From Octopus bimaculoides (Eukaryota), in assembly GCF_001194135.2 (NCBI RefSeq), contig NC_068981.1:52502395-52566394 (forward strand): a stretch of 64,000 nt of DNA, written 5' to 3'. Under the pieces are notes generated by a model. The model had not been told where the DNA came from, searched no databases, and worked only from the letters and a program-made list of their open reading frames with translations. Below, in pieces: positions 27,958 through 56,651 of this stretch; positions within the stretch are counted from its first letter, which is position 1, and each line of letters begins with the position of its first letter. The translations under genes were made by a program, and so were the position numbers.

Positions 27958-28504
27958 CTAAGAAAGAATGAATTAAGAAGGAAACATTCTAATAGTCAGT
28001 TAATGAAAAAGTATAGTTAATATTGTCCAAATTTAGTTTTCTATTCAACATTATACCATGAAATATATCTGCAGCATTGAGAGCTAACAAATGATTAACA
28101 GTTACATAGATTTGTTTTTCTTTTAGTTTTTTTCCTTTTACTATTGCTATGAAAGAGAGTAATTTTATTGACCCTAAATTCAAAGTGACATAAAAAAATC
28201 ATCAGCATTGCATATTCCAGGCATTAGGCTTTCTGTTTCATTCATCGCGTACAGTGTTCCTAGCTAATTTAATCACTGTTACAGGTGGACAGTCAAAATA
28301 AATAAAGACACAAAATTCTTTCACTTTTATAATATTCTCTAACCAAGTAATAATACACAATTACAACATATAAATAAATAATAAATCAAAAAAATGTGAA
28401 AACCAATAAGACATATTCTCTAATGCCAATATATGACCATATAGATTAAAAAAGTATGGAAGACCCTACATACAAAATATGTGCATACAACAAATTAGAG
28501 AAAA

Positions 28505-28690
28505 ACCGGTATAAACCACCGTTTTTCCCAGTTTGTCCATTTACGCGGGAGCTCTGGGCAAAATGTTATAGTGCATGACCATCCTTGGGACATAAGTAAT
28601 GTGTGTGTAAAGTTTGGTGAAAATCAGTTGAGAATTGTGGAAATGTGTTAGTCAATATACATACACACATAATGCGATTTATATATACTA
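28505..28690 (+). mobile_element. Short Helentron/HINE-like non-autonomous element
   Basis: Imperfect 5' hairpin aaaaaccgg..ccgttttt, core aagtttggtgaaaatcagttgagaattgtgg, (CA/TA)-rich end. Confidence 0.35.
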
Positions 28691-30002
28691 AATGACCAAT
28701 TGGCAGGGCTGTTAAAGCTTTAGATAGATTGTTTAGTGGTAATCATTCTGGATATTAGTGCTCAGAGTTCAAATCTTGCTAAAATCAACATTTGATCATC
28801 TTTCCAAAACTAATAAAGTATTGGATTGATTTCTCTCTCTCTCTCTTTTTTTCTTTTTCTGCTATCTGTCCATCTTTTTATTAGGAAGAAATTGGTTGTG
28901 GTCAGACCTGGAGAAAGATGAACTGTGCTAGGTCTAAAAATGTCCAAGACATATATATTATAATGAATAATTTAAAACATTCTAAACAGTAAATTGGCAG
29001 TAAAAGACTAAATTAGTGGAGGACAATATGCTTTGCATTGTTTGCCTTTCATCCTTTCATGACCAATAAAATGGAAGTATGAGTCATGGAGGGTGTATTG
29101 TCAGAATTGTTGAAGCATTAGACAGGATGCTTTATGGTATTTGCTCTAGCTCCTTGTCTTCTGAGCTCTTAGACTTAATCTGACACCTTGTTTAACACTA
29201 TCACCTGATCCATCGGTGCCTTTGGCAGAATTCACTCTGTTGGAAGTATCCAGGCCTGGTGTCTAGCTTGAGGATAGCTTCCTCTATTCCTCCCATCAGA
29301 TTGCATTTATAATCTTAAAAAATCTTCTTTATTCAATGATTTACAGTTACAAGCTAATACCTACCAAGTATGTAAAGTCAATTTTAGTAAAACAAAGAAG
29401 TATGACAGTGAATTTAAACCTCAAGTTTCAAAGTAGTATTGCATAAATTTTAAAGATCATATTGTAAGGTACAAGCAGCAGAGACATTTGTTTAAGCCAA
29501 ATAGGCATATAATTTATCAAAGAAAAAAAAAAAGAGGTTTAAAAAATTAACTTAAGATCAAATAAAAATATTCTTCTTTCACTAAATTTAAATAATAAAG
29601 AGAGATTAAATTGGCACTGATTAATAACTTGGGGAATCCATTGAAATATGGAATATCAGCTAAATGCCATAAACATTAGATCTTGTGCTCTTTGAGGGTC
29701 AAAAGTATTGACAATGATGTAAATATCTTCTCATAAAACAGTATATAGTTAGCACCAAGATTAGACTTTAGAACATCATCATCATCATTTAACATCCAAA
29801 CTGTCTACATATAAAAATCATAAAAAGAATTCTTTTGAAATCACAAGGATTTGTATAGTATCATATTTTGTCAATTCCAATTTATTTTATTGGTGTGTAA
29901 TTTTGAATAAACTGCTACCAGAAATTAAGAAATATCCAAGTAACTGATTTAGAACAAAAGGGTTCAATCGAGTCTCTTTAAATATTTTAAACATTTTCTT
30001 AC

Positions 30003-30054
30003 CGAATCAGCATATTTCGAAGAGCAATAAAGTCATTATGCTCAAGATTTTCAA
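30003..30054 (-). CDS. SEPT7: Septin-7-like exon ([V]ENLEHNDFIALRNMLIR)
   Basis: tactttcag acceptor, CG|gtaaga donor, 52 nt, phase 1 to 2. Confidence 0.96.
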
Positions 30055-30581
30055 CTGAAAGTAAAATAAACAAGTAATCTATTAGTGATCATTATGTAAT
30101 TACTCCAATAAAAGTTACAAATAGGCAAGTATGTGCACTTATTGGTGCAGAAAAATAGGTATGTTCACAGAATTTCTGATGCCATCAGTATGAAAAAAAC
30201 ACAATAGCTAACATAGTGTTAACATATTTAATGCAAAAAGTTTACTGGAAAAAAAAATTGTGTATCTTAAAAAAAAACCAAAAGCCATAACATTTATTGA
30301 TTATTATCATTTAAATTTTTTTTGGTAAGCAGGGAAATTCTTGCCAGTGTTATTAAACTTACTGCCCCCACCCCAGATTTTGTAGTCATAGCCAATATGC
30401 TTTTAGCAATGGTGTGAGTACAAGATTTTTTACTTGGTCTTTACTATTGTCAATCAATTGCCAGTATATAAAAATAGTTAAAAAATGATTTATTGAAAGT
30501 TTGGAAAAAAAATTCTTAGATTTAATTTTAAACTAAAGTCATCTTTATTTTACTTTTATCTTCGAAAAATATTATTCTAAC

Positions 30582-30678
30582 CTTCAACAATCCCCCATGG
30601 ATATTGACGTCCACGCATTCTCTTTCCATTGCAGTCAATCACAGTGTTACTGCCAACAACAGCGAAAGGAACTCGGTC
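30582..30678 (-). CDS. SEPT7: Septin-7-like exon ([32 protein letters not shown]), start of septin unique element
   Basis: atgttttag acceptor, G|gttaga donor, 97 nt, phase 0 to 1. Contains GRQYPWG. Confidence 0.97.
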
Positions 30679-30968
30679 CTAAAACATAAAATGTTATACT
30701 TTTACAAATAGGAAAAAGAAATGTTTAATTTACTCACTGTAAAATGTATTAATTATTTGAAATTATGAAGGGAGAAATGGTATAGATACCTATGTGAGGT
30801 TATTTACCATGGGTGCTACCTTAGTCGTTATAATGTTAGTTACATAATATATAGTTACAAAAAAAAGTTGTAAACTCCTTGCTAATTTCATAATAAAAGA
30901 TGGCATTTACAATTTTGATACTAATCACTCATATATATGTGAGTGTGTGCGATATATTATATATATGT

Positions 30969-31180
30969 ATCATCATCATTGACTATCCACTTTACATGCA
31001 GGTATAGGTTGGACAGGTTGACAAGATCTGCCGAGGTGCAGGGCTCTGTTGGGCTCCACTGTTGGCTTTGTCATGGTTTCTACAGTTAGATGCCCTTCCT
31101 ATTACCAACCACTTTACAGTGGATACTGGCTGCCTTTTTTGTGACACTGGCACTAGTGAGATTGCCAAGTTTGCAAGATA
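30969..31180 (-). mobile_element. RTE-type tail variant
   Basis: catcatcattgactatccactttacatgcaggtataggttggac..gatgcccttcct. Confidence 0.7.
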
Positions 31181-31485
31181 ATGAAAAAAAAAAAAAAAAA
31201 AAAGGAAGGGAAAAGCTCCCTCAACTGAATAGGAGTGTGTTTAAGAGATGGGGAGGTGACTTTATGTCAGGTGTTGAAGGTTAAAGTATGAAAGAGGGAC
31301 AGGCACAGATGTCTTGCTATAGAGGAGATACATAGCAAGCCCATATTATATAAAGGTGGATGAGAGTAACTGGAAGAAAGATAAAGATGGTGGTAACAGG
31401 GTACCAAAGTATACTCTCAAAATACAAGAAGGTTGGTATAAAGGAGAATATAGATAATATAGCTAGAGATGAGAGTGGAGGTGGA

Positions 31486-31852
31486 TCATCATCATCATTT
31501 AACGTCCGCTTTCCATGCTAGTATGGGTTGGACGATTTGACTGAGGACTGGTGAAACCAGATGGCTACACTAGGCTCCAATCTGATTTGGCAGAGTTTCT
31601 ACAGCTGGATGCCCTTCCTAACGCCAACCACTCAGAGAGTGTAGTGGGTGCTTTTACGTGTCACCCGCACGAAGGCCAGTCAGGCGGTACTGGCGACGGC
31701 CACGCTCAAAATGGTGTATTTTATGTGCCACCCGTACAAGAGCCAGTCCAGGGGCACTGGCAACGATCTCACTCGAAGGTCCTTACACATGCTGCGGGCA
31801 CAAGTGCCAGAAAGGAGACGCTGGGCACAGGTGCCATCACGATTTCGATTGC
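31486..31852 (-). mobile_element. Young RTE LINE 3' tail
   Basis: Near-identical to 55684-56050 and to the reverse complement of 7201-7432. Confidence 0.92.
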
Positions 31853-31868
31853 CCCAATAAGTCTTCGC

Positions 31869-32008
31869 ATATATATATCTATATTTATATATACATACAC
31901 ACACATATATATAGTTATATTTATATATACATACACACACATATATATATTTATATTTATATACACACACACATATATATATATATTTCAACACCATTAT
32001 ATATATAT
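31869..32008. repeat. Compound (TA)/(CA) microsatellite with about 36-nt periodicity
   Basis: tatatttatatatacatacacacacatatatata repeated about 3.5 times. Confidence 0.85.
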
Positions 32009-32306
32009 TTGTTGATTTTATCAAGGTAGCCCCAGTAGTAATTCATGTATCTTAATAAAAAATATTTTTAAGAATAGCAAGACATTTTCTTTCATAATAT
32101 CTCAAAACCCATACTATTCCTGCCCATTTTAGTCTCTTTAGAATAATAAATAATAATGATAATGAAATTATTGTGTATAGTGCTGAGGTGCACTACAATT
32201 TATCAAAAGTACATGTACAGTACATACAATTATGTACAAAAGTCAGGAAAGTGAACAGTGTATGAGTCATGATATACATGTGTGCATGCGTATGGAGGTG
32301 GGGATA

Positions 32307-32927
32307 TCAGGTGTAGTGTTGGCAAATTTCAGGAAGCATGGCGGTTTTAAGGGAAGCAATGTCTCGGCAACTAACAACTGATGCCAGTAGTTTGTTCCAT
32401 GCTTCAGCAACTCTGAGTGTGAAAAAATGTTTCTGAAAGTCATGGGAGCTGTGCTGTTTTCTGACTTTGTAGGAGTGCCCATGTGTGTTAGACACATGTA
32501 GCTCAAAAAGGTGGTTGTTGGCGCAATGGTTAATAATTTTGTGGGTGTTTACTAAGTCAGTTGCCAGACGTTGGAACTTCAATGTATCTTTACTCAGGGA
32601 AGCAAGGTGTTCAGAGTACAGTAGATGCCTGATTGCGTGTCTCTGAACAGTTTCCAGGAGGTCATTGTCCTGAGCAAGATAGGTGTTCCAGACTGGTGAT
32701 GCAAATTCCAAGTGTGGCCACACCATAACCATATACAGCCTTAAATAAACAGCTGGAGAATGGCCGACAAAGGTCTTGCTGAGTAATGCCAAGACACCCT
32801 CGGCTTCCTTGACAATTTTAGAGATGTGCTTTGTCCAGTGCAAATCGCTGCTGACAGTAATGCCCAAATTACGTTCACAAGAAGACTTCTTGTTCCAAAT
32901 ATTACACACTATTAGAAAAGCTACCAT
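32307..32927 (-). mobile_element. CR1-clade LINE 3' end (RT C-terminal region)
   Basis: PHLEFASPVWNTYLAQDNDLLETVQRHA..THGHSYKVRKQ..KHFFTLRVAEAWNKLLASVV. Confidence 0.9.
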
Positions 32928-35315
32928 CCTGCTTTATTAACAACAACTTAAGCATTATCTTGTTGAACATGAAAGAGGTGGTGGAAGATAAAGGAGAAAA
33001 ATAATTTCAAAAGCAATTCTGAAATGGTTAATTGATATAAAGAAATTAAAAAATTCATTAAGAAAAAAATTAAATGTAATTATATAATGAAAAATGAAGG
33101 TGAATTCATTGTTTCTAATCAGAACAACTAGTTTATGAATCCTTTTACAACAGCTTTATATTTATAATACCATCATTTAACATCCTTGTTCTATGTTGGC
33201 ATGAACTGGACAGTTTCATGAGGATCCAATGAGTCAAAGGGCTACATTGTGCACCAGTGTCTGCTTTGGGATGGTTTCTATAACTGGTTGCCCTCCCAAA
33301 GTCAACCACTTTACAGTGGGTACTGGGAGATTTTCTTCATGCTACCAGCAGTATTTGAGGTTGCTGTGTAGCTCAAAACTCTACAAGCCTGAGGAGGAGT
33401 ATGTGTGCTGCATCCTTACGTTAGATGGGGTTTAAGGTACGAGGGAAGAGGCTGGGGTAAAGCAGGTTTTGTTATAGAGAAGCTACATGACTACTCACAT
33501 TTAGGAGAGACAGTGAGAATGAACTGGTGGTATCTCCAAAGAAAGAGATAGTGGTGATGAGGTGTCTAGGTGCACCTCATGTAAAAAGAGTAGTAGTGGG
33601 AAGGGTTTGCAAGAGTGTATGGGAGAAGAGCTAGAGGAAGTGGGAAAGATTGGGAGGGGTTGCATCATTTGGAGAGGCTACAGGGATGCTAACAGCAGGG
33701 TAGAAATGACCTGTTTGTTAAAAATCTAACTTCAGAGAGAAAAAAAATGTATTGATTGTTCTATGTAGTTCACTCTGAAGGCCTAATCAACATACAATAC
33801 TGATTTTTCAAAATTGATAAAGTTTAACATAAAAGTTATTATTTTAGACAAAAATTACAATTTTTTTCTTTTGCTTTTCTTTCCAGTCAGTTGTATGATG
33901 GGAGAAAAAGGGTGATATGTTTCAATTACAGAAAGGGATGACGTTTTTTTTAATCCCAGATCAATATTTAAGGTTTAATTTAGTTTATGATTTACCAGAA
34001 AATAAAACTGCCATGATAAAATTATTGGGAAATGTTAAATGATTTAAAAATACAGACATGTCTATGTAAAAAATAAAAAAAATCAACAACAAAAAACCCA
34101 AAACAGAGTCAAGCTATTAAAATGTGTTTCTACTTCACAGAGTTAAAACCATTTTATATATGTTGATCATTCAAGTAACTAAAGAATTTAACAGACTATT
34201 CATACTTCCAAGGTCTCCTTGCTTGACTCTCATTCATCTACATCCATAGGAAAAGAAAATACATATAGTATGGAAAGCAATTTTATGAAAATTAGGGCTC
34301 TGTCGTCATACTGAATGAACAACTACTTGAAAAGGTGAATCATTTCAAAACTTAGGCTTCCTTTTAATTAAGGGATGGTTATTTATTATAGCAAAATAGA
34401 AAAGTGGTGACCCTGGATATTCTAGCTGCAACCAGTCTATATGTTATGTATCTGAAATCAATGTGTCTATATATTATGTACCTGAAATCAATGTGTTTAT
34501 ACAGTTGAAGCTATGAAAGTTATTGGTTGTCATTTATCTTCATGAATTGAATCCTAATGGCATGAACAAACGTTAAATGTTAAACACAGACATTTTAATC
34601 ATAAAACACTTTTTAAATCTTATAAACAACAACTCTATAAAAAGGGAGTGGGGGGAGATAAAAACAAAATCACCACATCTAATTGTCTAAAATGAGTTAG
34701 TAATAAGATTAAAAACTCTTAGAAAATCTTGAATTTTGCAGGAAACTGAAAGTACGTATCACATTCACTGACAAGATGAAGAGTTATCAAGAGTTATTGA
34801 TACATCACACAATATAACTTTCTATTCAAAATTTATGTTCAAAACTACAACGAACAGTTGAAAGCAACCATTGAAATGCAAAGTTATAAATTGTGTCTTT
34901 CAAACCTACCACAATTAATGAGGACTGTGAATCACATAAACTAATTAAAGACATAGTCAGGACACCTTACAAACTCACTATTGTCACAGGTTGAATGAGT
35001 TGATATAATTCCCAATTTTTATGCACTTAATTTTTTTGAATTTATATATATATGCCTCATCTTCAAAATGCCTAGTTTACAATAGAGGCAGCTGATGAAG
35101 GAAAAGTTCCATAAGTGGCTCGTCTGTTTTCCTATGTGTTCATTCTGTTGTCCGTAAAAAAAGTCCATTTTTTTGTACTTTGTTTATGTTCCCGTTCCTT
35201 TTTTGACGTCCTGTACCCGGATATGCATTTTTATATACATGTAGATGTAGGTATGTACATATATGTATGTATACATGCATATGCTCATATATCATTTGTA
35301 TTATATATATATATG

Positions 35316-35359
35316 TGGAGGTGCAATGGCCCAGTGGTTAGGGCAGCGGACTTGCGGTC
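35316..35359 (+). mobile_element. tRNA-derived SINE head truncated by gap
   Basis: gcaatggcccagtggttagggcagcggacttgcggtc carries a Pol III A-box. Confidence 0.7.
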
Positions 35360-36786
35360 NNNNNNNNNNNNNNNNNNNNNNNNNNNNNNNNNNNNNNNNN
35401 NNNNNNNNNNNNNNNNNNNNNNNNNNNNNNNNNNNNNNNNNNNNNNNNNNNNNNNNNNNNNNNNNNNNNNNNNNNNNNNNNNNNNNNNNNNNNNNNNNNN
35501 NATATATATATATATATATATAGAGCATAATTGTAATAATTAAACATATATAAATGCCAAAGGCATGAAGAGTATGATTTACAGATAAAAACATTGAATG
35601 AGAAAAATTGTTTATCAAGAATCAAGAGTTCAGTCATCTAGAAAAGAATGGCATTAAACATTTAACATGTTGCAATATCCTATTCATAGTTTGTAGATAT
35701 GTATTTTGACTTTGTTGCAGTAAAGATTTACATGTAATAATATTTTGCATTTACTTATTTTAGTAAAGATGGGATAGGGTATTTAAATGGAATCAAACTA
35801 AGTACAATGTGTTGAAGTTATAAATTGTTTGTTTTCTTCTTTAAATAAAAAAAGCTCCCCACCCACCAATCGAGAATAATAGTGAAGATAAACTGTGGTA
35901 GCAAGATCAAATTTAATTCAAACATTCAGTTTGTTTAATTTTGATATTCCTCAATTATAAAATAAGGAAATATATTTGCAGAGAGAAAAAAAAAGCACAA
36001 ATGGTGCCAAATTATAAGAATAGTAAAAAAAAAAAAAAGAAGAAATTAAATAAATAAATATAATAAATAAGTAAGTAAATAAGCACAATTAAGCAAAACA
36101 TGCAGAATTGAATAAGAAGGTCCTGAAAAGAATTTTAGAAAATGACAAACAACAATAAAACAAGAACATAAGCAAACTTTGAACCTACATTGAATGTTAA
36201 GTATTAATCTATAATTAACTAAAATTATAATTTCTAATAATTCAATGCAGCTTTGGATTAGGTAAAATAAGTTAGAGCTTCAAAAAACTATTATTAATAA
36301 AATAAAACCAGCATTTTTCATACTGATTGATTTAAAAGCAATGTTTTATATTTCTGAGTTTAACCAAGAACTAGTTTTTAGTATTAAAAACGTTAACAAA
36401 CAATATATATATATATGTGGTAAGTTGCAGAGCACCAACCAACACTGACTCATTGCACTAGATTAATTAATTAGTTTAACATATTTCTCTTGGCTGACAA
36501 TTATTTTGTAAACTTCAAAAAGTCCATAGTTCCAATACTTGACTGCTCAGCAGATGAGAGATCTTATCCAACGGGATAAGATGCCAATCTATAGCAAGTA
36601 AATTTGCCAAAAGTTCTGATACCTATTCCCAACAGGTGGGAACTAATGAACAAAGAATAAAGAAAGCAAGTTAAAGCTAGTTATGATAATTTGGTAACAG
36701 GATAATGATTTTCATCACAATGATGAATATTCCTAGTATTTACTGTAATAAAAAAAAGAATCCAGAATATGAAACTGGCATAATAT

Positions 36787-37455
36787 TCTTTTACTTGTTT
36801 CAGTCGTTTGACTGCAGCCATGCTGGAGCACCATCTTCAGTTGAAGAAATCGACCCCAGGACTTATTCTTTGCAAACCTAGTACTTATTCTATTGACCTC
36901 TTTTGCCGAACCGCTAAGTTATGGGGATGTAAACACACCAACATCGGTTGTCAAGCAATGGTGGGGGGACAAATACAGACACACAAACATACACACACAC
37001 ACACATACATATACTATGGGCTTCTTTCAGTTTCCATCTACCAAATCCACTCACGAGGCTTTGGTCAGCCTGAGGCTATAGCAGAAGACACTTGCTCCAA
37101 GGTGCCACGCAGTGGGACTGAAACTGTAACCATGTGGTTAGGAAGCAAGCTTCTTACCACACAGCCACACCTGCACCTAGAATAATAAAACACTAAGAAT
37201 AAGATTCAGTTATATAACTTATCTACACAATAATTTTCCCTGCAACGTATTTTTAGTCGAATGAATCAACTCCAATACTTTATACATATTTAAGACAGGC
37301 TTCTTTCAGTTTCCATCTACCAAATCCACTCACAAGGATTTGGTTGGCTTGGGGCTATATTAGAAGACACCTGCCCAAGGTGCTATGCAGTGGAACTGAA
37401 CCCAGAATCATGTTGTTGGAAAGCAAGCTTCTTACTACACAGCCACACCTATGCC
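36787..37455 (-). mobile_element. One full CORE-like SINE (36787-37180) plus a tandem half copy (37275-37455)
   Basis: Homologous to 5766-6120; gacaggcttctttcagtttccatctaccaaatccactcac is duplicated. Confidence 0.88.
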
Positions 37456-38134
37456 TATTAACATTTTTCATTGCGATATCTCTATCAATATAAAGTTACT
37501 TTGAATTTAAATACATTTATTATTATGATAAACTTAGTGATCTATTTCAGACTGAGAAAAATAATGATTAATCACAATATTTACACAGGAAAGATGATTA
37601 GATAAACTCAGTATATTCTTGTTATTTTATTGACCTAAGAGCGATGAGCAAAGTTGGCTCTGGAAATCAGAAGAATAAGGCACCAAATGAAATACTATAA
37701 CACAACTGGAAGTGCTTTAGTATTGGCCCTCATACATTTAACTAGAGAATTAGTGCAATAATGTCAGTAAAAGTATTTTCTGCATTATTTATCCAGTTAG
37801 TATATACTGTCATTTAAACATATGGTATTTATTTTAGAAAACATATGGCATTTATGCTCAGGTCATAATTTATAAGAATATTCAGCACATTCTATTTCAG
37901 AAGTTACAGAATTCATATTGGTAGTATGAATTCATTGGTAATTGGTAAGTTACAGAATCCATATTGGTAGTAAGAGTTTAAATTTCATAACTAGATAATA
38001 TCAAATAAAATATAGTATTTCAACCATTATGGTTTCTATTTCATTAACTTTAAGTAGAAAATCTCAAAATACCACTTTATGACAACCCTCATTTTAATTT
38101 TACTTAAATGGTTTCAAAAACAAAGTGAACTTAC

Positions 38135-38184
38135 GCATCACCTTCCACTCACAGAATAAAGTTCCTAAATACTTTAATGCAGAA
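38135..38184 (-). other. Candidate stop-containing (poison) cassette exon in septin intron
   Basis: Acceptor ttatttttctcatgttctactcag, donor TGC|gtaagt. Internal alternative AG (38165-66) and GTGAGT donor. TGA in frame 0. Confidence 0.4.
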
Positions 38185-38239
38185 CTGAGTAGAACATGAG
38201 AAAAATAATTATGGTTGTTTCGTTTGCTATTTAATTGAA

Positions 38240-38280
38240 TTGTAGCTCAGTTGGTAGAGCAGAAAACTGTAGTCTGTAGT
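38240..38280 (+). pseudogene. tRNA-Tyr(GTA)-like 5' half relic
   Basis: tgtagctcagttggtagagcagaaaactgtag matches the D-arm and anticodon arm of eukaryotic tRNA-Tyr. No B-box/T-arm follows. Confidence 0.5.
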
Positions 38281-39387
38281 GTAATTAAATATCAAAAGAT
38301 ATGTCCAGTAGAGCAAAGTAAATATATTACTTTTTGTATTATGTTAATACAAAGTATTTAATCTCTCCTAAACTATAAAAAAATAACTAATAATGACTTA
38401 TCCTGGGGATGTTGTTTTTCAGAATAAATTAGCTCCAATAATTCAATATTTTTTCATAATCAACCTTTTAATATATAATCTAATGTAATTTAAAACTGAA
38501 CATCATTAAAATTGTTGTTCAGCATTTTATTTTCAGTTTTATAGTGGAAAACCATCTCTTCCAAGTATTACTGCTAACATTTATGAAAATATTGAGGAGA
38601 CATTTCTAATGTAATTGAAGAAAGATATTTTTTTTGTTTAGAATAAAAGAATGCAATGGGCTAACAGAAAATGCTCAATTATATCCAAACCAGCTTTAAA
38701 AACTACTTTAAACTTTCTTCTGAACAAAATTCTAAATAATCTGGATTATTTAAAACCAATAGTCAATATCTGGTATTGCTCAAGTTAGCGATATTATGAG
38801 AAAGTAATATAAAATTTAATAACTAAAACTGAACACTTTTAAATAACAATTCTAATGAATGAAGCAGGAACTAGTTTTTATTATACAAATGAGTGCAGCA
38901 GGAATAATTTCAAATGTGTATAACATCTCACTATTAGCTGCATTTTCTAATAGATATAGGCAGCTCAGATTAAATATAGAAAAAAAGGGAAATGATTATT
39001 TTACATTCAGTGTCAAGTAACACTCAATTTCAGATGTGAGTGAGCTGTGAAAGTGGACTTCAACATAAACCACTTTTTAATAACCTTGTATAAACATACA
39101 AATAGTGAGTGACTAACATACGAAATCACATTAGATTATTAGATTTATATATTATCATGAACACCGAGATAAAATGTGCCAGTGAACATAAAAGTTGCAT
39201 TTAGAAACTAAAGCACGCCTAATGCTATTGCAATAGCAACAACTAAAACACATACGTTGCGATACTATATTAGGTACAGACATAAAGGGAAAAAGAAGAG
39301 TTTGGGTAAAGAACAACAGGCAAATGGAGACACTATAAGACATGAAAAAAAAAAAAACAGAAAGCAGAAAATAATTTAGTTACATAC

Positions 39388-39417
39388 CTTGAAGAATTTA
39401 CCGCTTTTTAAGTCTTT
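39388..39417 (-). CDS. SEPT7: Candidate 30-nt alternative microexon of the septin (KDLKSGKFFK)
   Basis: Strong acceptor ctattttatttcaacctttcag and donor AAG|gtatgt. Exactly 10 codons, open, inside a phase-0 intron. Confidence 0.72.
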
Positions 39418-41775
39418 CTGAAAGGTTGAAAATAAAATAGTGTGCAAGATCCAACTTAGCAGACAGCTAATTCTTCACTTCCCAGATAGGTATGAGATAA
39501 GATACTTTTAGAAATGTGAAAACCAACTTAATATTTCGGAGATTTTTTTCAACTTCTATAAGTTTTTAAGCATATAGATATTGTTGAATAGAATTACTGC
39601 ATATATGTGTATGTCTATGTATACTTGTACACATATGCATGCACACCGATTTAAATAATTAAATGATATTAAAATGAAACAGTTCTGAATTGATAAATAA
39701 TACAATTTCTGTACTTCATCAAGAATAGTATATAAAAACAAAATGTATATTAAGAAATGAAGACAGATGTTTGTTAAATAATAGTGAAATGCAACTTTTG
39801 TCATAATAATAATTAGAGATGAAACCGAAGTATCGCACAAGAGTAAGATTTTATAATACAATTAGTATGAGAACCTCAATAAAAAATCAAGCTAAATAGT
39901 AAGATTTCTTTAATCATCTACAGCTACAATCATTGTACATTAATAAAAGTTGTAAGAGTTTTCTTCTAAAAACTAAAGAAAAAAGAACGAAAATTTCCCT
40001 ATTATACAGAGATATGAACTGATAAAGATAAAATTCAAAAGCATCCATGTTTCCACACATTACTACATTTTCTAACCCAACTTCTATTTATCTAGTTATT
40101 AATAATAGGTGGAATAGAATACTAATCAAATATAAAGAGCTAGTTCAATAACTCAGTCTTGCAACTACATAACTTGAAATTTAATTATAGGCCTATATGT
40201 TTAAAATATATTATTGGTAGAGCAGTTAGAAACAAAAATTATGGACAGTCTTACTTTTGACACTATTTCTATAAGTGAGATTTTTTCAAATTGTCTTTTG
40301 GCAATACATATCCTGTGGTTAGGCTTGAACTTAATGTATTTATTTTAAAATCTAGCCAGCCACAAGGTCCTGAATAAAAGCTCCTGAATGGCTAAGAGTA
40401 TATAAAGTGTGCTTAAAATAAAAGTTATAGAAATATGGCGTGAAGACAATCAGTTTGATCATTCAAAAGGAATAGGTAAAAGAAAATACAAAAAAAAAAA
40501 ACAAACCCAAAAAACCACAACAAACTTAAATTAAATTTAAATGAATCTAAGATAACTGAAAATATAGTAAAACAATATTTTAAAAAAAGTCAACACTAAT
40601 GGTAGTTTCTAGCAGTGTTAGTGTAAAACTGTTTAATAATACACCAACATCATTTCAATAACAGCAAATGAGTTATAGTAAGGCAGAAAGTTATAAGGCA
40701 GAAAGCTATTATATTAATGTTATTAGTACAAATAGCAAAGCAGGATGATAGTTTAAAAGTTGGCAAAATTTGAAGTAATATACTAGAATAGCATATATTA
40801 AAAACCCATTAAATCAATTAAACTAATGAAGGGGAAAAAAAAAGTTTGGTTGCTAAATATTTGCCACAAAATACTAAGCATTCATTAATGCTACTTCAGG
40901 CAAAGTTTTAAAACAGGGACATAATTTTGTTAAAAGTGTCAAGAATGTTATATACTTAATCATATCTATTAATACAATTTTAAATTAATGACTTGGATAA
41001 GTTTCCCCCAGTTTCATCACTAAATATTTTGAAGTATCTTAATAAATATTAGTAAGTACATTGTGGAAGAGTCATAGCTTTTTATGAACACAAAAATCTA
41101 TATTCAAAAATCTTTCATTTCTTTTTTAATTCTAGTTTATTCTGAAATGTCAACAATTTCCGTTACCCTTCTATGACTTGGTCACTGTTACAATTTCAGT
41201 GCACAATTGTATCAGGAAGCAGGTCAGAGAAGTGCAGTGTTGAGACTTCATAACAGACTGTGGTATGAAAGAATGTGAAAGTGAATATAGCTCTGCAAAA
41301 ATGTAGCTGTTTCAGTTTCAGCATAAGATCTCGGATCAAGTCATCTGCCAAAAAGTATGACACTGGAATTAATAAACTTTATAATTCACTCATATAAATT
41401 TAGATAAGTTGAGGATAAAAGTAGTACCATATTAGACAATCCTAGGCAATTTGAAATGCAATTGTTTTTAGATAATTAAAAGAATAAATAAGCAAAATAA
41501 AGCTAAACATAAAAAAATATTGAAGTATATAGGGTGGCAGAATTTTGAAATAGTCCTAAAAATTCCACCTGCAATACAAAACCTGCAAAACATAACTTCG
41601 GAAGATTTTTTTCAATAAAATATATGAACAACTTTATAAACTATATGTAAAAAATACTCTCATATTCAAATAAGTACTTTTATGACATGGAGGTGGGGAG
41701 CAAAATAAATCACCACAAATATTTAAACAAAGAAAACAATTATTAACAAAGAAATACAGTGTAGAATAAACAAAC

Positions 41776-41871
41776 CTTTAGTAATTTCTTCTGCAGTTTG
41801 TTTTCCTCTTCATCATCACATTCAGGAAACTCATAGATTTTAATTTTATGCTGCGCTATTTCATTTAAAAT
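41776..41871 (-). CDS. SEPT7: Septin-7-like exon with polyacidic region ([32 protein letters not shown])
   Basis: cttatgcag acceptor, AAG|gtttgt (weak) donor, 96 nt, phase 0 to 0. Confidence 0.95.
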
Positions 41872-43789
41872 CTGCATAAGATAAGTCAGAAGAGATCATG
41901 GAATGGAGACAATGAATATATTCTTTGACATAATTTCATTCATTCTACAAATGTACATAATATAGCTAACGTTATAGAATTATTATATTTAATAAAAGAT
42001 GGTGTTTTCTCTCTCTCACTCACTCAAAATGTATGACAACAGATACACATCCTCTGAATAAATATATGAATTGAATAATAAATTAAAAACAGGTGTAAAG
42101 ATGAAAATTATATTTGTAATAATGAGTGAAGACTCGATCCATTTTCCTATGCATGCATTTGAGATCATTAGGTGTTTTTTTTTATATTCACAAAGGCTTT
42201 TGTTTCAAGCAACACTTCATGACTAATAGTCAATACGATCTCGTTAATTTTCAAAACTCTTTTCTTAATCTCCAACAACAATAGTTACTTATGATTCATA
42301 AACATCCAATACCCAGGTTAATTAAATTACATACTCAATTTCTCATCTTAAGTTAGATATTTTGTCTTAAAATGCTTAGAAATACCAAAGTTTTTGCTAC
42401 TCAATTTTGGAACTGTTTTGTTAGATTATCTGCATATAAATTATCATCCAATGTTTTAAAAAATTTTTTATTTCCATAGAAAAAAGAATTATCCCCCTTG
42501 TTTTAAAAAACTAAAGGAAACAGAAAATGCAAGGGAGAGATACAAGCTTCAAGTTGCAATTTTATCTTGTATGAATAATGTTAGCTTCTTAATTCAGTTT
42601 AAACATATTAAACTCTTACAATCCTAAAATGCATAAAACTGCAACCAATCACTTTTGTGCATGAGGGACAAAGTCTAGCTTCATTCTGAATTCTATAAAG
42701 AATTTCTTGTCACATGGTTTCCTGTTCACATTTAATCGAGTGAATTTCTCTGGATTTTGCTTCCTTCAATTTATGAACATAATGGCAATGAATACCTCAA
42801 GTTAAGTGAATTAGAATTCAGTGACATTATCCATTAATTTAATTAGAGAAAGAGAGCTTAGACATGGACACAAAGAATTGGAATATTTCAGTTTCATCTA
42901 TAAACACCAACTAAGTGACATTGGAATTTACTGATTCTGAGCAGGAGTGCAATTACCACATAACTGATATGGCTTCAATAATTTTCTTAATAGATAGTAA
43001 TCTTTAAAAAAAAAAAAAAGTACTGATATATTTTAAATGTGTAGTTTCCAGATTTATGAAGAAAACATAATTATTGTAATAAAAGTGAACAACTCTCATT
43101 TGTTGAACCTTACAACATCATTGAATGGAGGAAATGAAAACATAGCTTGGAATCCTTTTTTGAACGTGTAGCTTCAAAGTTACAAAGACTAGCTGGAGCA
43201 CAATTTCAGCTCTAAAACAGGAAACTGATGCCCAGGAATCAATATCTTGTAACTATATGTGAAAACACCTATGTGTAATCAACTTAACTGTATTCAACCT
43301 ATCTTGGCAGGTGAAAGTGACATGACTAAGTAAAAACCACATTCACAATGTACACCAATGGTCGTTATATTGTATCAGTAAACTTCATCCAAATTCATTC
43401 CATTGTCATATTTTTATGATTTTTAAACTGGACTAATTACATTTCATCAAAATCTCTAATTTCTAACAAGACTGGGAGATTTTGAGACAGAAAGAACTAT
43501 AGAGTTTTAAGAGTTAACATTCAGCTTAGCATTATATAAAATATTCAAATTATCACTTATAAGATAACATTTTAATGCTTAAATCATCATAGTTAATGAG
43601 CTCTTTGCACACTTAGATTGCTCCTATTTGATAAGGACAAAAACTCTTGAGTTTGGTGCATTTTGCTCTTTTTATTAGGCTACCTGGAAGAGGTTACTTC
43701 ATTATAATGGTGGTCTAAGCAGGATTTTGAACTTAGGGCTGAACTGAAATAGATACTCCAAAGCATCCTACTCAACATTCTAATGAATC

Positions 43790-43890
43790 TGACAATCTGC
43801 AACTCTGGAATGGTATTTTATTTAACCCTGGAAGGATGAAAGACAAAACTGATCTCAGCAGGATTTGAATTCAGAGTGTGGAAATCTAGA
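43790..43890 (-). mobile_element. Nin/Meta-type SINE fragment
   Basis: Reverse complement ctctgaattcaaatcctgctgagatcagttttgtctttcatccttccaggg. Confidence 0.65.
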
Positions 43891-44178
43891 ATGATTTCAA
43901 CAGATAGGAAGAGGCTATTTATTTCTAAAGTATTTCAATACTTATAATGAATTACAAATATACATAGCTCCACATAATATTGTCCAACAACATAGTAAAA
44001 TCAAATTTAGGTTTTTCATTGTTATACATGTGTATTCTGGATTTTAGAATAGATACATCATATCCAGTTATAAAACACTCTCATCCAACCCATATCAGTA
44101 TGGAAAATAGATGTAAAAATGACTGTTGTATTGAAATCATGAAAGAATAAATACAAAATAAATACAAAAAAAACTTAC

Positions 44179-44296
44179 AGTTTTCTTGAAATCTCTGCAT
44201 TCATCTGGTGTCAGTGTATCAGCTTTGGCAACGAGTGGAATAATATTTACTTTATCATGAAGACGTTTCATGAATTCAACATCAAGCGGTTTCAGT
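44179..44296 (-). CDS. SEPT7: Septin-7-like exon with G4 motif ([39 protein letters not shown])
   Basis: tacttcag acceptor, ACT|gtaagt donor, 118 nt, phase 2 to 0. Contains AKAD. Confidence 0.97.
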
Positions 44297-44407
44297 CTGA
44301 AGTAGTTAGAGAAACAATTATTTTATTACAGATGAGCTTTCTTCTTTATGACAAATATTTAGTTTTGCTATATATTACCAATTAAAACTGTTGAAATTAT
44401 TACTCAC

Positions 44408-44542
44408 CCATGACCTGTGGGAGCAATGAAATATAAGCAACAATGGACTCTGTTGTCAGGCATAATGGTTCGGTTAACCCTGGATTCTGAGTTGAGATAT
44501 TCTTCATATTTAGTGTCAATGAAATCAATTACAGGCTGCCAA
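44408..44542 (-). CDS. SEPT7: Septin-7-like exon ([45 protein letters not shown])
   Basis: ttcaaaag acceptor, GG|gtgagt donor, 135 nt, phase 2 to 2. Contains Sep1/Sep2-type motifs. Confidence 0.97.
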
Positions 44543-44769
44543 CTTTTGAAGAATTGGAAAAAAAAAAAATTGTATTAAAATATTGTAAAAAGACAAAACT
44601 AGAAACTAAACTAAAGCCCGCTATAATGACCTGTTGCATAGATTCGGAAGACAGGGAAATAAGATCGTGTTGTGCAACACACACTTTTTAGTGTTAGCTA
44701 TTCAAGTGGAAAGAGAATTAAAAACCCATGTCAAACTCTTTATTTCTTAAATCCATTTTCATTTATTCA

Positions 44770-44975
44770 GATGGCTGCTGGCAAAATTGTTAGCATGCCA
44801 GACAAAATGCTTAGTGTATGCCCTGTGTTCAAATTCTGCCAAGGTCAACCTTGCTTTTCATCTTTCCAGGATTAATAAAATTAAATACCAGTCAAGTACA
44901 GGGGTTGATGTAATCAACTTTTCCCCTCCTTCAAAAACCACTGGCTCTGTGCCAAAATTTGAAACCAATTATTTT
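44770..44975 (+). mobile_element. Nin/Meta-type SINE
   Basis: Homologous to 7486-7690. Confidence 0.78.
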
Positions 44976-45593
44976 TCAATTTGTTAGTCATTTTCCAAAC
45001 ACCAGCTTAATTCTGAAAGCATGATGTATTTTACTAAATCCCATAAAATTTTTGAAACAGTGTTTGTCAATGGAAATATTGCTGTATAAAATTAATTGAA
45101 ACAGAGGTTTCACTGGAAGTATTGCAACAAAAGTTAGAATTAATAAAGTTATTTTTCTTATGATACAATAGCATGGATACATTGTCATCAATAACATTCT
45201 AAAGTCTATCTTTTCATTGTCATGAACTATGGAAAGGTTAGCTATATAGCATATCTCCATTTAACTCAAGCTTTTATGAGGACCAGCATCTTGAGATCTG
45301 ACCACACTACTCCTTCCTATATCTCCCTTTTCCAATGGTACTTTCTACCAAGAGCACATGCCCTGTGTGCATTTGCATTACATGTTTATTTATTCTTTAA
45401 GGTCACTTGTGCTTCATCTTTTATGTAAGCTAGCATCACATATCTAACAGGTCATGATTACATCATTAATCTCCAAATCCTTTCCAGTCAATGATCCTAT
45501 CTCAACTGCTGCATCACACTTCTTACACATGTTACATAGAGTCTTGCCAAAATATTCAATGTTTTTCAAATACAAAATGGAATAGATTCATAC

Positions 45594-45694
45594 CAATTGC
45601 TGTTGTCAACTGCATCTCCAAAACCTGGTGTGTCAACAACAGTTAAACGCAATGAAACACCATTTTCTTTAAGGAGTACTTGAGTTGTGTCAAC
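45594..45694 (-). CDS. SEPT7: Septin-7-like exon with G3 motif ([34 protein letters not shown])
   Basis: tttatag acceptor, TG|gtatga donor, 101 nt, phase 0 to 2. Contains DTPG. Confidence 0.97.
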
Positions 45695-45980
45695 CTATAA
45701 AGGAAAAAAAAAAATGAAAAATATGATCTTCTGAAAGCAAAGTTTATTTTATAAAATTACTAATAAAAAAGCCTAGATATTTCAATGGAATATATATAAA
45801 GTTGCAGTCATGGATGAAAGTATTATGTATAATAGTTGCAGTTGAAATAATGGCATCAATTAACCAACTTGTCCTGTCAACAGTAAGTAGTTCCTCAAAC
45901 CAGAAGAAGTACTGCAGAAATGAATATTCTTAATCTTAATTAGTAATTTCTTTTTTAATTTAAAAATTTTTATGTTTTTA

Positions 45981-46102
45981 TATTTTTGGCATTAGGAAAG
46001 GCATCCAGCTGTAGAAATCATGCCAAACAAGTAAAAAAGCATAATGTGTTCCATGGACCCATTCATTCCTGTCAAACATCCAATTCATGCTAGCATGGAA
46101 CG
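45981..46102 (+). mobile_element. RTE 3' tail fragment
   Basis: ggcattaggaaaggcatccagctgtagaa..atgctagcatggaa..aaatgatgatgat. Confidence 0.78.
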
Positions 46103-49100
46103 CATATATTAAATGATGATGATTTTATAGAACTTAAGATATTTTATTTGGACGCTGTCAATATGAAACTAGATCCTGGGTATTTGTAAAGCTTAGAGAT
46201 GAAAGTGTTGAGTAGTTCCTCAGTGGCCTATAGCACATTCTATAATTTTACTTACACTTAATTATTACTGACAAATAGAAAGTTACTGAAACTTTGGTGA
46301 ATTTGTACAAATTATTGGAACAAATGTTTTTTGTTTTTTTTTATGAATGTCAGAACAAGAGTAATATATTATTTTCAGTTCAGAAGATTGAAACGGCTAC
46401 AGTAGTATTGTAAACATAATTGAAAATGCATTTGTGAGTACATGTGCCATATTTTACTCATTTAGACAGCAGACTTTTGCATTGCATAATACAAATTTCT
46501 TCAATGATGGAATATAACATAATTAAAAAAATTTGATTATAAATTCTTTATGCTACTATCAAACATTGGCTTCATTTTTAATACATAAGTATGCTTGTGT
46601 GTGCATGTATATACACACAAACATATACAGATCAATAAAGAAAAAAATCAGCAGCCTCTCCAAAACAGATTAGGTGAATATTATACAGGATTGCAATGTG
46701 AAGAATGCAAAGCTTTTGTAAAATGCTGCTACTAGAGGTAACTGAGTGCCATCTCTCCACTTAAATACCATTAAAGGGGGATCATTTGCTGACATTATAC
46801 CAAAACAGAAAAATTCATTTTTGAATAGAACAAATATTCTGAGAAAGTTGAACATCGTGAAAAGTTGAAAATATGGAGCAACATTAAAAAGGAATGAATA
46901 ATAAGTATTATTTATAACATTGGAATGACATTTCAAATTTTAGGAGGAGTAAAAATGTAAAGCTGTCACGTAGATATCTTTCCCAAGTGTATTAGTAAAG
47001 AAAAACAGAATTTATCACAAACTACTCCAGCAATACTAATAGCAAAAAAGTTAAGTTGATTATTAAAATTTTTTGTCAGGAAGAAAAAGATAAAATTACA
47101 AGTGTAATATATTTAGGGTGAGGCCACAACAGTGTAACTTAAAGTTATCATGTGTATCTTATGAAAATGGAGTAATTACTAATAACAATGGCTGTTTGTT
47201 GAAGGCCAGCACTATAAGCTACACATTGTAAAATGCTTTTCCCAACACTGTGACACACTTTAGCCACATTTATTTCTTAGTTACTTTAAACATATTCCAC
47301 AGTTTAGACAGCTTTTCACCAAAAATTTTATCAAAATTGTACACAGATGATTCACATCTTAATTGTTAATTATTATTCATTTTTAAAATCGTACTTTATG
47401 AAATCCTTAAAAATTAATAAGGAGCTTATATTACCAGCACCATCCACTTATTACTAACACTGATTTTTTTTTTTTGCCATATTTTTTTCTATCTTGAAGA
47501 GAAGTAGGGGGTGGTTTGAGAAGATTTGGCAGCTAAATTCTAGCAGGCTGAGAGACTTCCTATTCTAACTATTACTGACAGTAGCAAACCTTTTGATATC
47601 ATTCAGCCCTGCCCACTTGTACTCTGTTGAATAGTAAACACCACCTTAAAAACAACACAAAATGCTGGCTGATGAGCTGTTATTGCTAATGACAGTAGGC
47701 CTATGTAAGGTACAGAAGGAACATATATAGAATCCTGGAATCTGTAACCCTTTTTAAACAGAATACTGTAAAGATCTTTCTCATTTATACTTATTATCCA
47801 TTTCATCTCATAATAAAAATATATATGCACAACCTCATAAGTAGATGACAATATTATAGTCTTTTCACCACACTTTATAACTGCTCAAACCCATATTTCA
47901 GTCACAGATGAAAGCATTATCTATAAAACTCCATCATCTTTCTTTTAAATGAAAACAAAGTGATGCACAAATATTTAGTACTAGGAAACAACATTTCTAC
48001 AATCTGCAGCATGCCTTAAAAGTTTCTAGAGATTAAGAAACCCCACAAAACTCTAAATTCACGAATCTCATAAATGTATTTTAGAATGACTTGAAAAGAG
48101 ATTAATCCTTAGTTGTGCATCACAACTCCACAATTGTGTCTGTCTGGAGAAATGGAAACAAATCTTAAAAAGTATGTGCGTCAAGAAATCCAAAGGTGAA
48201 GGAAGGGGTGTGCATGCACAAAGCCAGGATCACAAAACTTCCCAGCAATCATATGGTACAAGAATGGGGTCTGAATTACAAGATATTGTAGGAAATTTGT
48301 ATGACATTCAAAATGCTGTTCCACAGAATATTTTCAAAACACCCAATAAATTAATGTCATATATTTTGATGCAATAATTAAAGTCAAATAGATAGCCATC
48401 ACCACAAAAAAAAAAGAAGGAAAAAGAACAAAAACAAAATAAAACCCTATTTAATTCATCAAAACAGCTCATCCATTATTTAATGCAATTAATTAACCTA
48501 TATTCATTTAAATAATTGTTTAAGCCTTGTGTCATAAAATTCTTTGCTCTGAAAATTTTCAAATTAAGAATACAAATTTCTTTTAATTCATGAAATCATC
48601 TGCTTATATTTTTATAATGCTGTATTATTTAGATGTTGTTCATCAGAGTAGTTCATTCAAACTGGTAAGGATGAAACTAATATTCATTGTTCAGTAGAAT
48701 TATCCTACTATACAGACAAGTCTCATCTTAGACTAACAGTTCCTCTTGTAAAAAAAAAATATATATTATTTAATAAATACCAAATGCAATAGAAAAAATG
48801 CTATTTTTGTCTTTTATACATCAGATTATTTTATGACAAACACGTCCAGCAAACTTGGATATTGTACATTTGATACATATGAATATCATCATGGCTGTGC
48901 ACACACACACAAATTCTTTTTCAATCCTGGCCCAAAACACAAGCCTTTTCCAGCTGCCCATATCCTTTCTTAGTCATTTCCTCTTATGCCCTCACCTCTC
49001 ATGTCAATCCTACTACATTTTACCCTGCCTGCTTCAGTTTAAGCTACCATTAACAACAGCAAACAGTGTCTACAGTTTTAAAAATAATCTTACAATGTAA

Positions 49101-50559: not shown

Positions 50560-50563
50560 TAGA

Positions 50564-50613
<50 letters not shown>

Positions 50614-50650
50614 GGTGATGTGAGAGAGAAGTAGATAGATAGATAGATAT
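50560..50650. repeat. (GT)n(GA)n(GATA)n microsatellite
   Basis: Directly visible. Confidence 0.9.

Positions 50651-56620: not shown

Positions 56621-56651
<31 letters not shown>

What the first reader, a model, noticed from the sequence alone, without database searches (positions are those of the whole stretch)
39388..39417. 30-nt microexon adding KDLKSGKFFK next to the septin polyacidic region
Seen: textbook splice sites, frame-preserving, a weak upstream donor (gtttgt), and TGC motifs in the upstream intron (..tctgctaag..cttgcacactattttatttcaacctttcag). Established: the junction lies after the DDEEE patch and helix alpha5', near the NC interface; vertebrate SEPT7 reads directly KIK-DRL here; neural microexons driven by SRRM3/4 (eMIC) use upstream UGC. 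Inference: a probably neural switch adding four Lys and two Phe that could neutralise the acidic patch, alter filament assembly or bind phosphoinositides.
Basis: partly seen in the sequence, partly recalled or inferred. Interest (0 to 1): 0.75.

Follow-up and report, generated by a model that had tools for sequence, protein, structure and literature searches.

The report
Annotated alternative 30-nt exon in octopus septin-7
The 30-base segment is a real alternatively spliced exon of the Octopus bimaculoides septin-7 gene, already annotated and shared by octopuses and cuttlefish, that adds a 10-residue loop beside an acidic filament-contact patch; whether it is brain-specific is untested.

Summary
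On the minus strand, 39417-39388 is a 30-nt, phase-0, stop-free exon (tttcag|AAAGAC...TTCAAG|gtatgt). It lies between the septin-7 exons ending ...[14 protein letters not shown] and starting [10 protein letters not shown].

The exon chain in the window reproduces RefSeq XP_014776064.1 (septin-7 isoform X2, Octopus bimaculoides) exactly, so the exon is already annotated. Isoforms with and without it are annotated in O. bimaculoides, O. sinensis, O. vulgaris and Sepia pharaonis. An orthologous 30-nt exon (NDLKG[GS]K[SP]LQ, 23/30 nt identical) is spliced into RNA-seq contigs from seven cuttlefish runs. More than 80 other contigs skip it.

None of 94 isoforms from other molluscs carries an insert here, so on present annotations it looks restricted to coleoid cephalopods.

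The structural placement is right: directly after helix alpha5' and next to the polyacidic region at the NC interface.

The neural/SRRM (eMIC) reading is not supported by anything I could test. The two upstream TGC motifs are no more than chance (P about 0.16), the exon's own splice sites are not weak, and no tissue data were reachable. Only the D-L-K-x-x-K core is conserved, not the four Lys and two Phe.

Verdict: real, ordinary, already annotated; function and regulation are open.

The parts
39388..39417 (-). 30-nt alternative cassette exon encoding KDLKSGKFFK (residues 402-411 of XP_014776064.1)
   Evidence: sequence, phase 0, GT-AG; 100% match to the RefSeq isoform; isoforms with and without it
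39418..39440 (-). 3' splice site: pyrimidine-rich tract ctattttattttcaacctttcag ending in CAG
   Evidence: PWM 3.8, about the median of this gene's acceptors
39444..39461 (-). Upstream intron stretch with TGC at -29 and -44 and a branch-point-like CTAAG at -42. The nearest upstream AG is at -39.
   Evidence: TGC count not above background (P=0.16)
39382..39387 (-). 5' splice site of the cassette exon, AAG|gtatgt
   Evidence: PWM 8.9, second strongest donor in the gene
41776..41871 (-). Upstream constitutive exon [32 protein letters not shown] (polyacidic region plus helix alpha5')
   Evidence: structural placement
41770..41775 (-). Weak upstream 5' splice site AAG|gtttgt
   Evidence: PWM 4.6
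30582..30678 (-). Downstream constitutive exon [32 protein letters not shown], with a weak acceptor (ttttatgttttag, PWM -2.2)
11896..60180 (-). Part of the septin-7 gene inside the window. Coding exons: 60180-60074, 45694-45594, 44542-44408, 44296-44179, 41871-41776, 39417-39388, 30678-30582, 30054-30003, 27957-27844, 27644-27509, 26975-26830, 11926-11896. An alternative terminal exon lies near 19931. The 5' exons lie beyond position 64000.
   Evidence: the boundary at 60180 was read by eye

Best explanation
The segment is a genuine cassette exon of the Octopus bimaculoides septin-7 (SEPT7/peanut orthologue) gene. It is already annotated and is conserved across coleoid cephalopods.

Shown: the spliceosome can define the 30-nt exon through its own adequate 3' splice site and strong 5' splice site (AAG|GUAUGU). 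It can also skip the exon by joining the weak upstream donor (AAG|GUUUGU) to the weak downstream acceptor. Both mRNA forms exist in octopuses and cuttlefish.

Shown: inclusion keeps the reading frame and inserts 10 residues, consensus x-D-L-K-[G/S]-[G/S]-K-x-[F/L]-x, between the last residue of helix alpha5' (...[14 protein letters not shown]) and the strand [10 protein letters not shown].

Inferred: the insert is a flexible, Gly/Ser-centred, net-basic surface loop (+3 in octopus, +1 in cuttlefish). It lengthens the alpha5'-to-strand linker beside the polyacidic patch. In other septins that patch docks the polybasic regions PB1 and PB2 at the NC interface, which for SEPT7 faces the SEPT6-group partner. 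The most likely effect is a modest tuning of NC-interface electrostatics or of polybasic-region release for membrane binding, in the subset of cells that include the exon.

Not established: which cells include it, and which factor controls inclusion.
For: - Exon chain with GT-AG at every junction reproduces XP_014776064.1 exactly.
- Isoforms with and without the 10 residues are annotated in O. bimaculoides, O. sinensis, O. vulgaris and Sepia pharaonis.
- Orthologous 30-nt exon AATGACTTGAAAGGCGGTAAATCTTTGCAG (23/30 nt identical) is joined precisely to both flanking exons in RNA contigs from SRR8281663, SRR8281676, SRR8281688, SRR20545812, SRR9970013, SRR21372852 and ERR12374249.
- SRR20545812 is Sepia esculenta whole larva (PMC10466719).
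- The skipped form occurs in more than 80 contigs, including runs from the same series.
- The candidate ranks 2/292 among possible pseudo-exons.
- The insert falls in an 11-residue gap relative to human SEPT7 in PDB 2QAG chain C.
- The polyacidic region precedes alpha5' and contacts PB1/PB2 at the NC interface (PMC7201284).
- The AlphaFold2 G-domain model puts alpha5' at residues 390-401 and the insert mostly in coil.
Against: - For O. bimaculoides itself the transcript evidence seen here is only RefSeq model proteins. No reads were examined.
- The AlphaFold2 model is mediocre (mean pLDDT 57.6, below 50 over residues 400-407, which include the first six residues of the insert). The loop conformation is therefore not reliable, and no dimer was modelled.
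- The C-terminal half of the insert diverges strongly (KFFK versus KSLQ or KPLQ). Any function that depends on charge or on the Phe residues is therefore not conserved.
- No functional or tissue data exist in the literature searched.
Confidence: 0.85

Rival explanations
1. One reading: a neuron-specific switch exon whose inclusion is driven by the Srrm234/eMIC factor through upstream UGC motifs. On this view it adds a basic, hydrophobic patch that neutralises the acidic region or binds phosphoinositides.
For: - The exon is short (30 nt), frame-preserving and deeply conserved within coleoids, as many neural microexons are.
- UGC motifs sit at -29 and -44, with a CUAAG branch-point-like motif at -42. 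UGC enrichment and a CUAAY branch point are described features of eMIC exons (PMC8797185).
- In whole-animal or whole-larva cuttlefish assemblies the skipped form dominates: about 82 contigs against 7. That fits inclusion restricted to some tissue.
Against: - The TGC count is not above background (2 in 60 nt, P=0.16; 1 in 40 nt, P=0.4).
- The motifs lie upstream of the pyrimidine tract, not next to the AG.
- The exon's 3' splice site is average and its 5' splice site is strong. PMC8797185 reports very weak 3' splice sites for eMIC exons.
- 30 nt is outside the strict 3-27 nt class.
- Lys and Phe content is not conserved in cuttlefish.
- No tissue metadata or intron conservation could be obtained.
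Confidence: 0.25
2. A real but functionally near-neutral alternative exon. The surface loop tolerates a 10-residue insertion, and the isoform ratio reflects splice-site competition rather than a regulated programme.
For: - The insert sits in a linker and is modelled with low confidence.
- Five of the seven nucleotide differences between octopus and cuttlefish change the amino acid, concentrated in the C-terminal half. The flanking exons are almost invariant at protein level.
- Inclusion and skipping both turn up within the same run series. The S. esculenta series with known metadata are whole larvae, as expected if PSI is intermediate and the assembler's choice is stochastic.
Against: - Exon length (30 nt), phase, position and the D-L-K-[GS]-[GS]-K core are kept in both octopods and decapodiforms. 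That split is deep, a few hundred million years from my own knowledge, not tested here.
- Nucleotide identity of 77% is similar to that of the neighbouring constitutive exon.
Confidence: 0.25
3. A chance pseudo-exon or annotation artefact: an AG...GT pair in a long AT-rich intron that gene predictors picked up.
For: The 11.1-kb interval holds 292 open, frame-preserving AG...GT segments, and one other segment scores as well overall.
Against: The orthologous exon is spliced into de novo RNA assemblies of at least two or three cuttlefish species from seven independent runs. It is also annotated independently in four cephalopod genomes.
Confidence: 0.02

Closest known systems
RefSeq/GenBank septin-7 isoforms of coleoid cephalopods (O. 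bimaculoides XP_014776064.1 and XP_014776063.1; O. sinensis XP_029656066.1 and XP_029656067.1; O. vulgaris CAI9715008.1; Sepia pharaonis CAE1319371.1)
   Same: It is the same exon. The O. bimaculoides entries are identical in sequence to the window. The others carry KDLKGGKFFK or NDLKGSKPLQ at the same junction.
   Different: Nothing differs. The exon is annotated there but, as far as the searchable literature shows, has never been described or studied.
Neural microexons controlled by SRRM3/SRRM4 (eMIC domain of Srrm234 in non-vertebrates)
   Same: Short, frame-preserving, conserved cassette exon inserting a few charged residues on a protein surface near an interaction interface. UGC motifs and a CUAAG element are present upstream.
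   Different: Its 30 nt exceed the strict 3-27 nt limit. UGC is not enriched above background and is not adjacent to the AG. The 3' splice site is not weak. Neural enrichment and Srrm dependence are untested.
Human SEPT7 in solved septin complexes (PDB 2QAG, 7M6J, 6N0B)
   Same: The G domain is about 80% identical. The polyacidic DDEEE patch, the alpha5' helix and the following strand are all shared.
   Different: Human SEPT7 goes directly from KKIK to DRLPLAVVGS. The octopus isoform has 11 extra residues in the alignment: one extra alpha5' residue found in all cephalopods, plus the 10-residue exon.
Septin 7b isoforms of xenocypridine fish (Megalobrama amblycephala XP_048007751.1; also Culter and Chanodichthys)
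   Same: An optional insert at exactly the same exon junction, after KKIK and before DRLPLAVVGS.
   Different: The insert is 14 residues (EEPCVSNALVSKAK) and unrelated in sequence. It is seen only in this fish clade among 117 vertebrate representatives, so it is most likely an independent origin. No transcript evidence was checked here.

Membership tests
Septin-7 (SEPT7 / peanut) subgroup gene | Septin-type GTPase domain with P-loop [20 protein letters not shown] and the septin unique element; best match to SEPT7 rather than other subgroups | tested here: met
   Motifs are read in the exon translations. The precomputed Pfam domain is PF00735. Against PDB, Septin-7 scores E=5e-142, compared with Septin-2 at 1e-98 and Septin-6 at 1e-66. 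The window is identical to RefSeq 'septin-7 isoform X2'.
Cassette (skipped/included) alternative exon | Canonical AG/GT boundaries, length a multiple of 3, no in-frame stop | tested here: met
   tttcag|30 nt|gtatgt, phase 0, KDLKSGKFFK
Cassette (skipped/included) alternative exon | Both inclusion and skipping mRNAs exist | tested here: met
   Annotated protein isoforms with and without the insert exist in four species. In Sepia, RNA-seq contigs encode the 615-aa form with the insert and the 605-aa form without it. For O. bimaculoides itself only model proteins were seen, not reads.
Microexon, strict definition (3-27 nt) | Exon length 3-27 nt, as used in PMC7935315 and related papers listed | tested here: not met
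   The exon is 30 nt. It qualifies only under looser limits such as <=30 or <=51 nt, which I know from memory.
eMIC / SRRM3-4-dependent neural microexon programme | UGC motifs enriched close to the 3' splice site | tested here: inconclusive
   TGC at -29 and -44: 2 in 60 nt against a background mean of 0.73-0.75, P=0.16; 1 in 40 nt, P=0.4. A single locus cannot show enrichment.
eMIC / SRRM3-4-dependent neural microexon programme | Very weak 3' splice-site region with a long AG-exclusion zone (PMC8797185) | tested here: not met
   The acceptor PWM of 3.8 is about the median of the gene's 11 acceptors. The AG-free zone is only 36 nt, from -38 to -3. The PWM is crude and built from remembered frequencies.
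eMIC / SRRM3-4-dependent neural microexon programme | Neural-enriched inclusion and dependence on Srrm234 (eMIC) | not testable with these tools
   No read-level RNA-seq access. Run metadata were found only for whole-larva or whole-animal samples. Supplements of the one preprint with octopus tissue splicing data are not held.
Coleoid-conserved exon | Orthologous exon at the same junction in both Octopodiformes and Decapodiformes, and absent outside cephalopods | tested here: met
   Present in three Octopus species and in Sepia esculenta, S. pharaonis and one further cuttlefish-like run. Absent from 94 isoforms of abalone, chiton, clams, Aplysia, Biomphalaria, scallops, oysters and mussels, and from about 110 other invertebrate representatives. 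Nautilus was not examined. The cluster with sequence AVVGS (P0125, probably squid) showed only the skipped form.

The most novel reading that the evidence does not exclude
The exon is a coleoid-cephalopod innovation that acts as a tissue-restricted switch, possibly specific to the nervous system. It would place a basic, flexible loop beside the polyacidic patch of septin-7. That could alter how PB1 and PB2 dock at the SEPT6-SEPT7 NC interface, and so alter filament assembly or membrane binding. If so, it would be a rare case of alternative splicing inside a septin G-domain interface. A parallel, independent insertion at the same junction exists in some fish.
Probability: 0.15. Interest if true: 0.55.

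Novelty: already known. Interest (0 to 1): 0.27.

Why it matters
Septin isoform diversity is usually attributed to the N- and C-terminal extensions. Here an optional insert sits inside the G domain, immediately after helix alpha5' and beside the polyacidic patch that shelters the polybasic, membrane-binding regions at the NC interface. That gives a natural handle for testing how this patch controls filament assembly and membrane association. If inclusion proved tissue-specific in coleoids, it would add a lineage-specific cytoskeletal switch to the list of cephalopod transcriptome specialisations. As it stands, the exon is an annotated, ordinary cassette exon with no functional data.

Tried and rejected
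1. A 130-aa protein query around the junction returned only short fragments and no cephalopods. A 378-aa query was needed.
2. Genomic DNA of O. sinensis and Sepia pharaonis, wanted to test conservation of the intron flanks and UGC motifs, could not be retrieved. The isoform P0122 is not on record, and the genes span more than 150 kb.
3. Tissue of the inclusion-form runs: full-text searches for the SRA accessions identified only Sepia esculenta whole larvae and S. pharaonis whole animal. Nothing was found for SRR82816xx, SRR99700xx, SRR213728xx or ERR12374249.
4. A 2026 preprint analyses tissue-specific splicing in O. bimaculoides, but it does not mention septin and its supplements are not held.
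5. AlphaFold2 on the full 603-aa isoform was poor (pLDDT 49). The G-domain-only model was mediocre (pLDDT 57.6). I therefore ran no fold search and draw no interface conclusions from it.
6. The idea that the exon is part of a repeat or transposon was rejected: the 500-nt neighbourhood is unique in the window.
7. Structured RNA, tRNA and Rfam family around the exon were rejected: fold z-score 0.17, no Rfam hit, no tRNA.
8. Other high-scoring pseudo-exons in the intron, such as 37069-37055 (ADQSL), have no support in any annotated isoform.

Full report
**What is in the sequence.** The window is AT-rich (about 30% GC). It carries most of a septin gene on the minus strand. Read on that strand, positions 39417-39388 are AAAGACTTAAAAAGCGGTAAATTCTTCAAG, which encodes KDLKSGKFFK. 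The segment is preceded by ...tctgctaagttggatcttgcacactattttattttcaacctttcag and followed by gtatgtaac. The exon upstream ends ...GATGATGAAGAGGAAAACAAACTGCAGAAGAAATTACTAAAG|gtttgt at 41776. The next exon begins ttttatgttttag|GACCGAGTTCCTTTC at 30678. All three junctions are phase 0.

**Gene model.** tblastn with a remembered human SEPT7 sequence, followed by exact matching to a retrieved protein, gave this minus-strand exon chain:
- 60180-60074
- 45694-45594
- 44542-44408
- 44296-44179
- 41871-41776
- 39417-39388
- 30678-30582
- 30054-30003
- 27957-27844
- 27644-27509
- 26975-26830
- 11926-11896

Every junction is GT-AG. An alternative terminal exon lies near 19931. The exons encoding the N-terminus lie beyond position 64000.

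**Is it more than chance?** I scored splice sites with a crude PWM whose frequencies I supplied from memory.
- The cassette exon's donor (AAG|gtatgt, 8.9) is the second strongest of 11 in the gene.
- Its acceptor (3.8) is about the median.
- The upstream donor (AAG|gtttgt, 4.6) and the downstream acceptor (-2.2) are weak.
- The 11,097-nt interval between the constitutive exons contains 292 open, frame-preserving AG...GT segments of 3-63 nt.
- The candidate ranks second by summed score, and no other segment matches or beats it on both sites.

Sequence alone makes it a good candidate but not a proven exon.

**Independent evidence that it is real.** A 378-aa translation of the chain, insert included, matched 'septin-7 isoform X2 [Octopus bimaculoides]' (XP_014776064.1) at 100% identity and coverage. 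This identifies the organism and shows that the exon is already annotated.

Cluster listings show isoforms both with and without the 10 residues in four species:
- O. bimaculoides: KDLKSGKFFK
- O. sinensis and O. vulgaris: KDLKGGKFFK
- Sepia pharaonis: NDLKGSKPLQ

De novo RNA contigs from public runs encode 615-aa proteins with NDLKG[GS]K[SP]LQ. The 30-nt block AATGACTTGAAAGGCGGTAAATCTTTGCAG sits exactly between the orthologous flanking exons. It is 23/30 identical to the octopus exon, about the same as the neighbouring constitutive exon. One of these runs, SRR20545812, is Sepia esculenta whole larva. Contigs L001-L004 differ from one another by 0-5 nt and so come from the same species.

The skipped 605-aa form is far commoner. 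P0267, P0268 and P0269 occur on 59, 14 and 7 contigs. It also occurs in runs of the same series as the inclusion contigs, for example SRR8281684, SRR9970004/06/08/12, SRR21372856/60/61 and SRR20545806.

**Phylogenetic spread.** Among the 120 best representatives of the septin-7 search, only the three cephalopod inclusion forms and two cyprinid fish proteins have extra residues at this junction. Isoforms cluster together at 90% identity, so I listed the members of ten further mollusc clusters: abalone, chiton, venerid and myid clams, Dreissena, Aplysia, Biomphalaria, scallops, oysters and mussels. None of the 94 isoforms covering the junction has an insert.

On present annotations the exon looks restricted to coleoid cephalopods. 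Nautilus was not available. A second decapodiform cluster (P0125) showed only the skipped form.

Among 117 vertebrate SEPT7 representatives, 110 read straight through. Xenocypridine septin 7b has an unrelated 14-residue insert at the same junction. One viper model has a 62-residue insert that looks like an annotation artefact.

**Where the insert sits in the protein.** Alignment to human SEPT7 of PDB 2QAG shows an 11-residue gap between ...ENKLVKKI and KDRLPLAVVGS. Castro et al. 2020 (PMC7201284) describe three relevant points:
- The polyacidic region lies at the entrance to helix alpha5'.
- It gives PB1/alpha0 a 'safe haven' when the NC interface is open.
- It contacts PB2 of the neighbouring subunit when the interface is closed.

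That SEPT7's NC partner is the SEPT6 group comes from my own knowledge of the revised hexamer order.

An AlphaFold2 model of the G domain (mean pLDDT 57.6) places alpha5' at residues 390-401 ([10 protein letters not shown]). It leaves most of the insert (402-411) as coil, with pLDDT below 50 across residues 400-407. The full-length model was worse. These models agree with a flexible linker but are too weak to say more.

**What is conserved in the insert.** The four sequence variants seen share x-D-L-K-[G/S]-[G/S]-K-x-[F/L]-x. The octopus version has four Lys, one Asp and two Phe (net +3). The cuttlefish versions have two Lys, one Asp and no Phe (net +1). The proposal that four Lys and two Phe neutralise the acidic patch or bind lipid therefore rests on features that are not conserved. 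A Gly/Ser-centred basic turn is what is kept.

[quoted passage not shown] The findings at this locus are:
- TGC occurs at -29 and -44, and CTAAG at -42.
- Two TGC in 60 nt is expected by chance in 16-17% of windows of this gene. One in 40 nt is expected in about 40%.
- The AG-free zone is only 36 nt.
- The acceptor is not weak.
- The exon is 30 nt, just above the strict 3-27 nt class.

I could not obtain tissue-resolved evidence. Run accessions traced only to whole larvae or whole animals. Supplements of the one preprint with octopus tissue splicing are not held. Orthologous introns could not be fetched because the genes exceed 100 kb.

The predominance of the skipped form in whole-animal assemblies is compatible with tissue-restricted inclusion. 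It is equally compatible with a low or intermediate PSI everywhere. I put neural enrichment with Srrm dependence at about 0.25.

**Other checks.**
- The 500 nt around the exon are unique in the window.
- No Rfam family or tRNA lies nearby.
- The pre-mRNA around the exon folds no better than shuffled sequence (z = 0.17).
- Literature searches for septin with microexon, cephalopod microexons, and septin with octopus and splicing found no description of this exon.

**Verdict.** It is already present in public annotation, and it belongs to a well-known kind of feature, a short frame-preserving cassette exon. Its position beside the polyacidic patch makes a modest effect on the NC interface or on membrane binding the most plausible function, but that is inference. 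The neural/SRRM reading is untested, and the cis evidence offered for it is no better than chance.

Noticed in passing
window 19900-19960 (-) and 11896-11926 (-): There are two alternative 3'-terminal coding exons of the septin-7 gene: ...AAWSTFFRLKR* near 19931 and TKKDKKKSIF* at 11926-11896. They correspond to the two C-termini seen among the RefSeq isoforms.
   Followed up: partly
proteins P0201, P0204, P0384, P0386 (Megalobrama, Culter, Chanodichthys septin 7b): Xenocypridine fish septin 7b isoforms carry an unrelated 14-residue insert (EEPCVSNALVSKAK) at exactly the same KKIK|DRLP junction. This intron position may be a recurrent site for optional exons. The insert was not seen in 110 other vertebrate representatives.
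   Followed up: partly
L001-L005 and L006-L015 (Sepia septin-7 mRNA contigs), CDS nt 603, 918, 1789; window 39403-39405: Three of the five variable positions among Sepia esculenta contigs are A/G, including AGA/GGA (R597G near the C-terminus). Position 5 of the cassette exon is AGC (Ser) in the O. bimaculoides genome but GGC (Gly) in O. sinensis, O. vulgaris and Sepia. Both patterns could reflect A-to-I RNA editing, polymorphism or species differences. Without genomic reads these cannot be told apart.
   Followed up: partly
window 32310-32933 (-), 166-693 (+), 63626-64000 (+): Long open reading frames lie outside the septin exons. The 208-aa frame in the intron downstream of the cassette exon resembles, from memory, the C-terminal part of a non-LTR retrotransposon ORF2, but it has no Pfam hit. 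The frame at 166-693 has a sub-threshold PHD-finger match (23.9 bits against a cut-off of 24).
   Followed up: partly
window 3252-3425, 6645-7200, 35360-35501, 52567-53518: Four assembly gaps (runs of N). The gap at 35360-35501 lies inside the 8.7-kb intron downstream of the cassette exon, so a further small exon hidden there cannot be excluded.
   Followed up: no
window 41776-41790 (-): All cephalopod septin-7 proteins have one extra residue in helix alpha5' (KKLLK), where other molluscs and arthropods have KKL[KR]. This is independent of the cassette exon.
   Followed up: no
window 44297-44407 (-): A very short 111-nt intron separates the exons ending ...FIAPTGHG and starting LKPLDVEF. Neighbouring introns range from 2 to 15 kb.
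   Followed up: no
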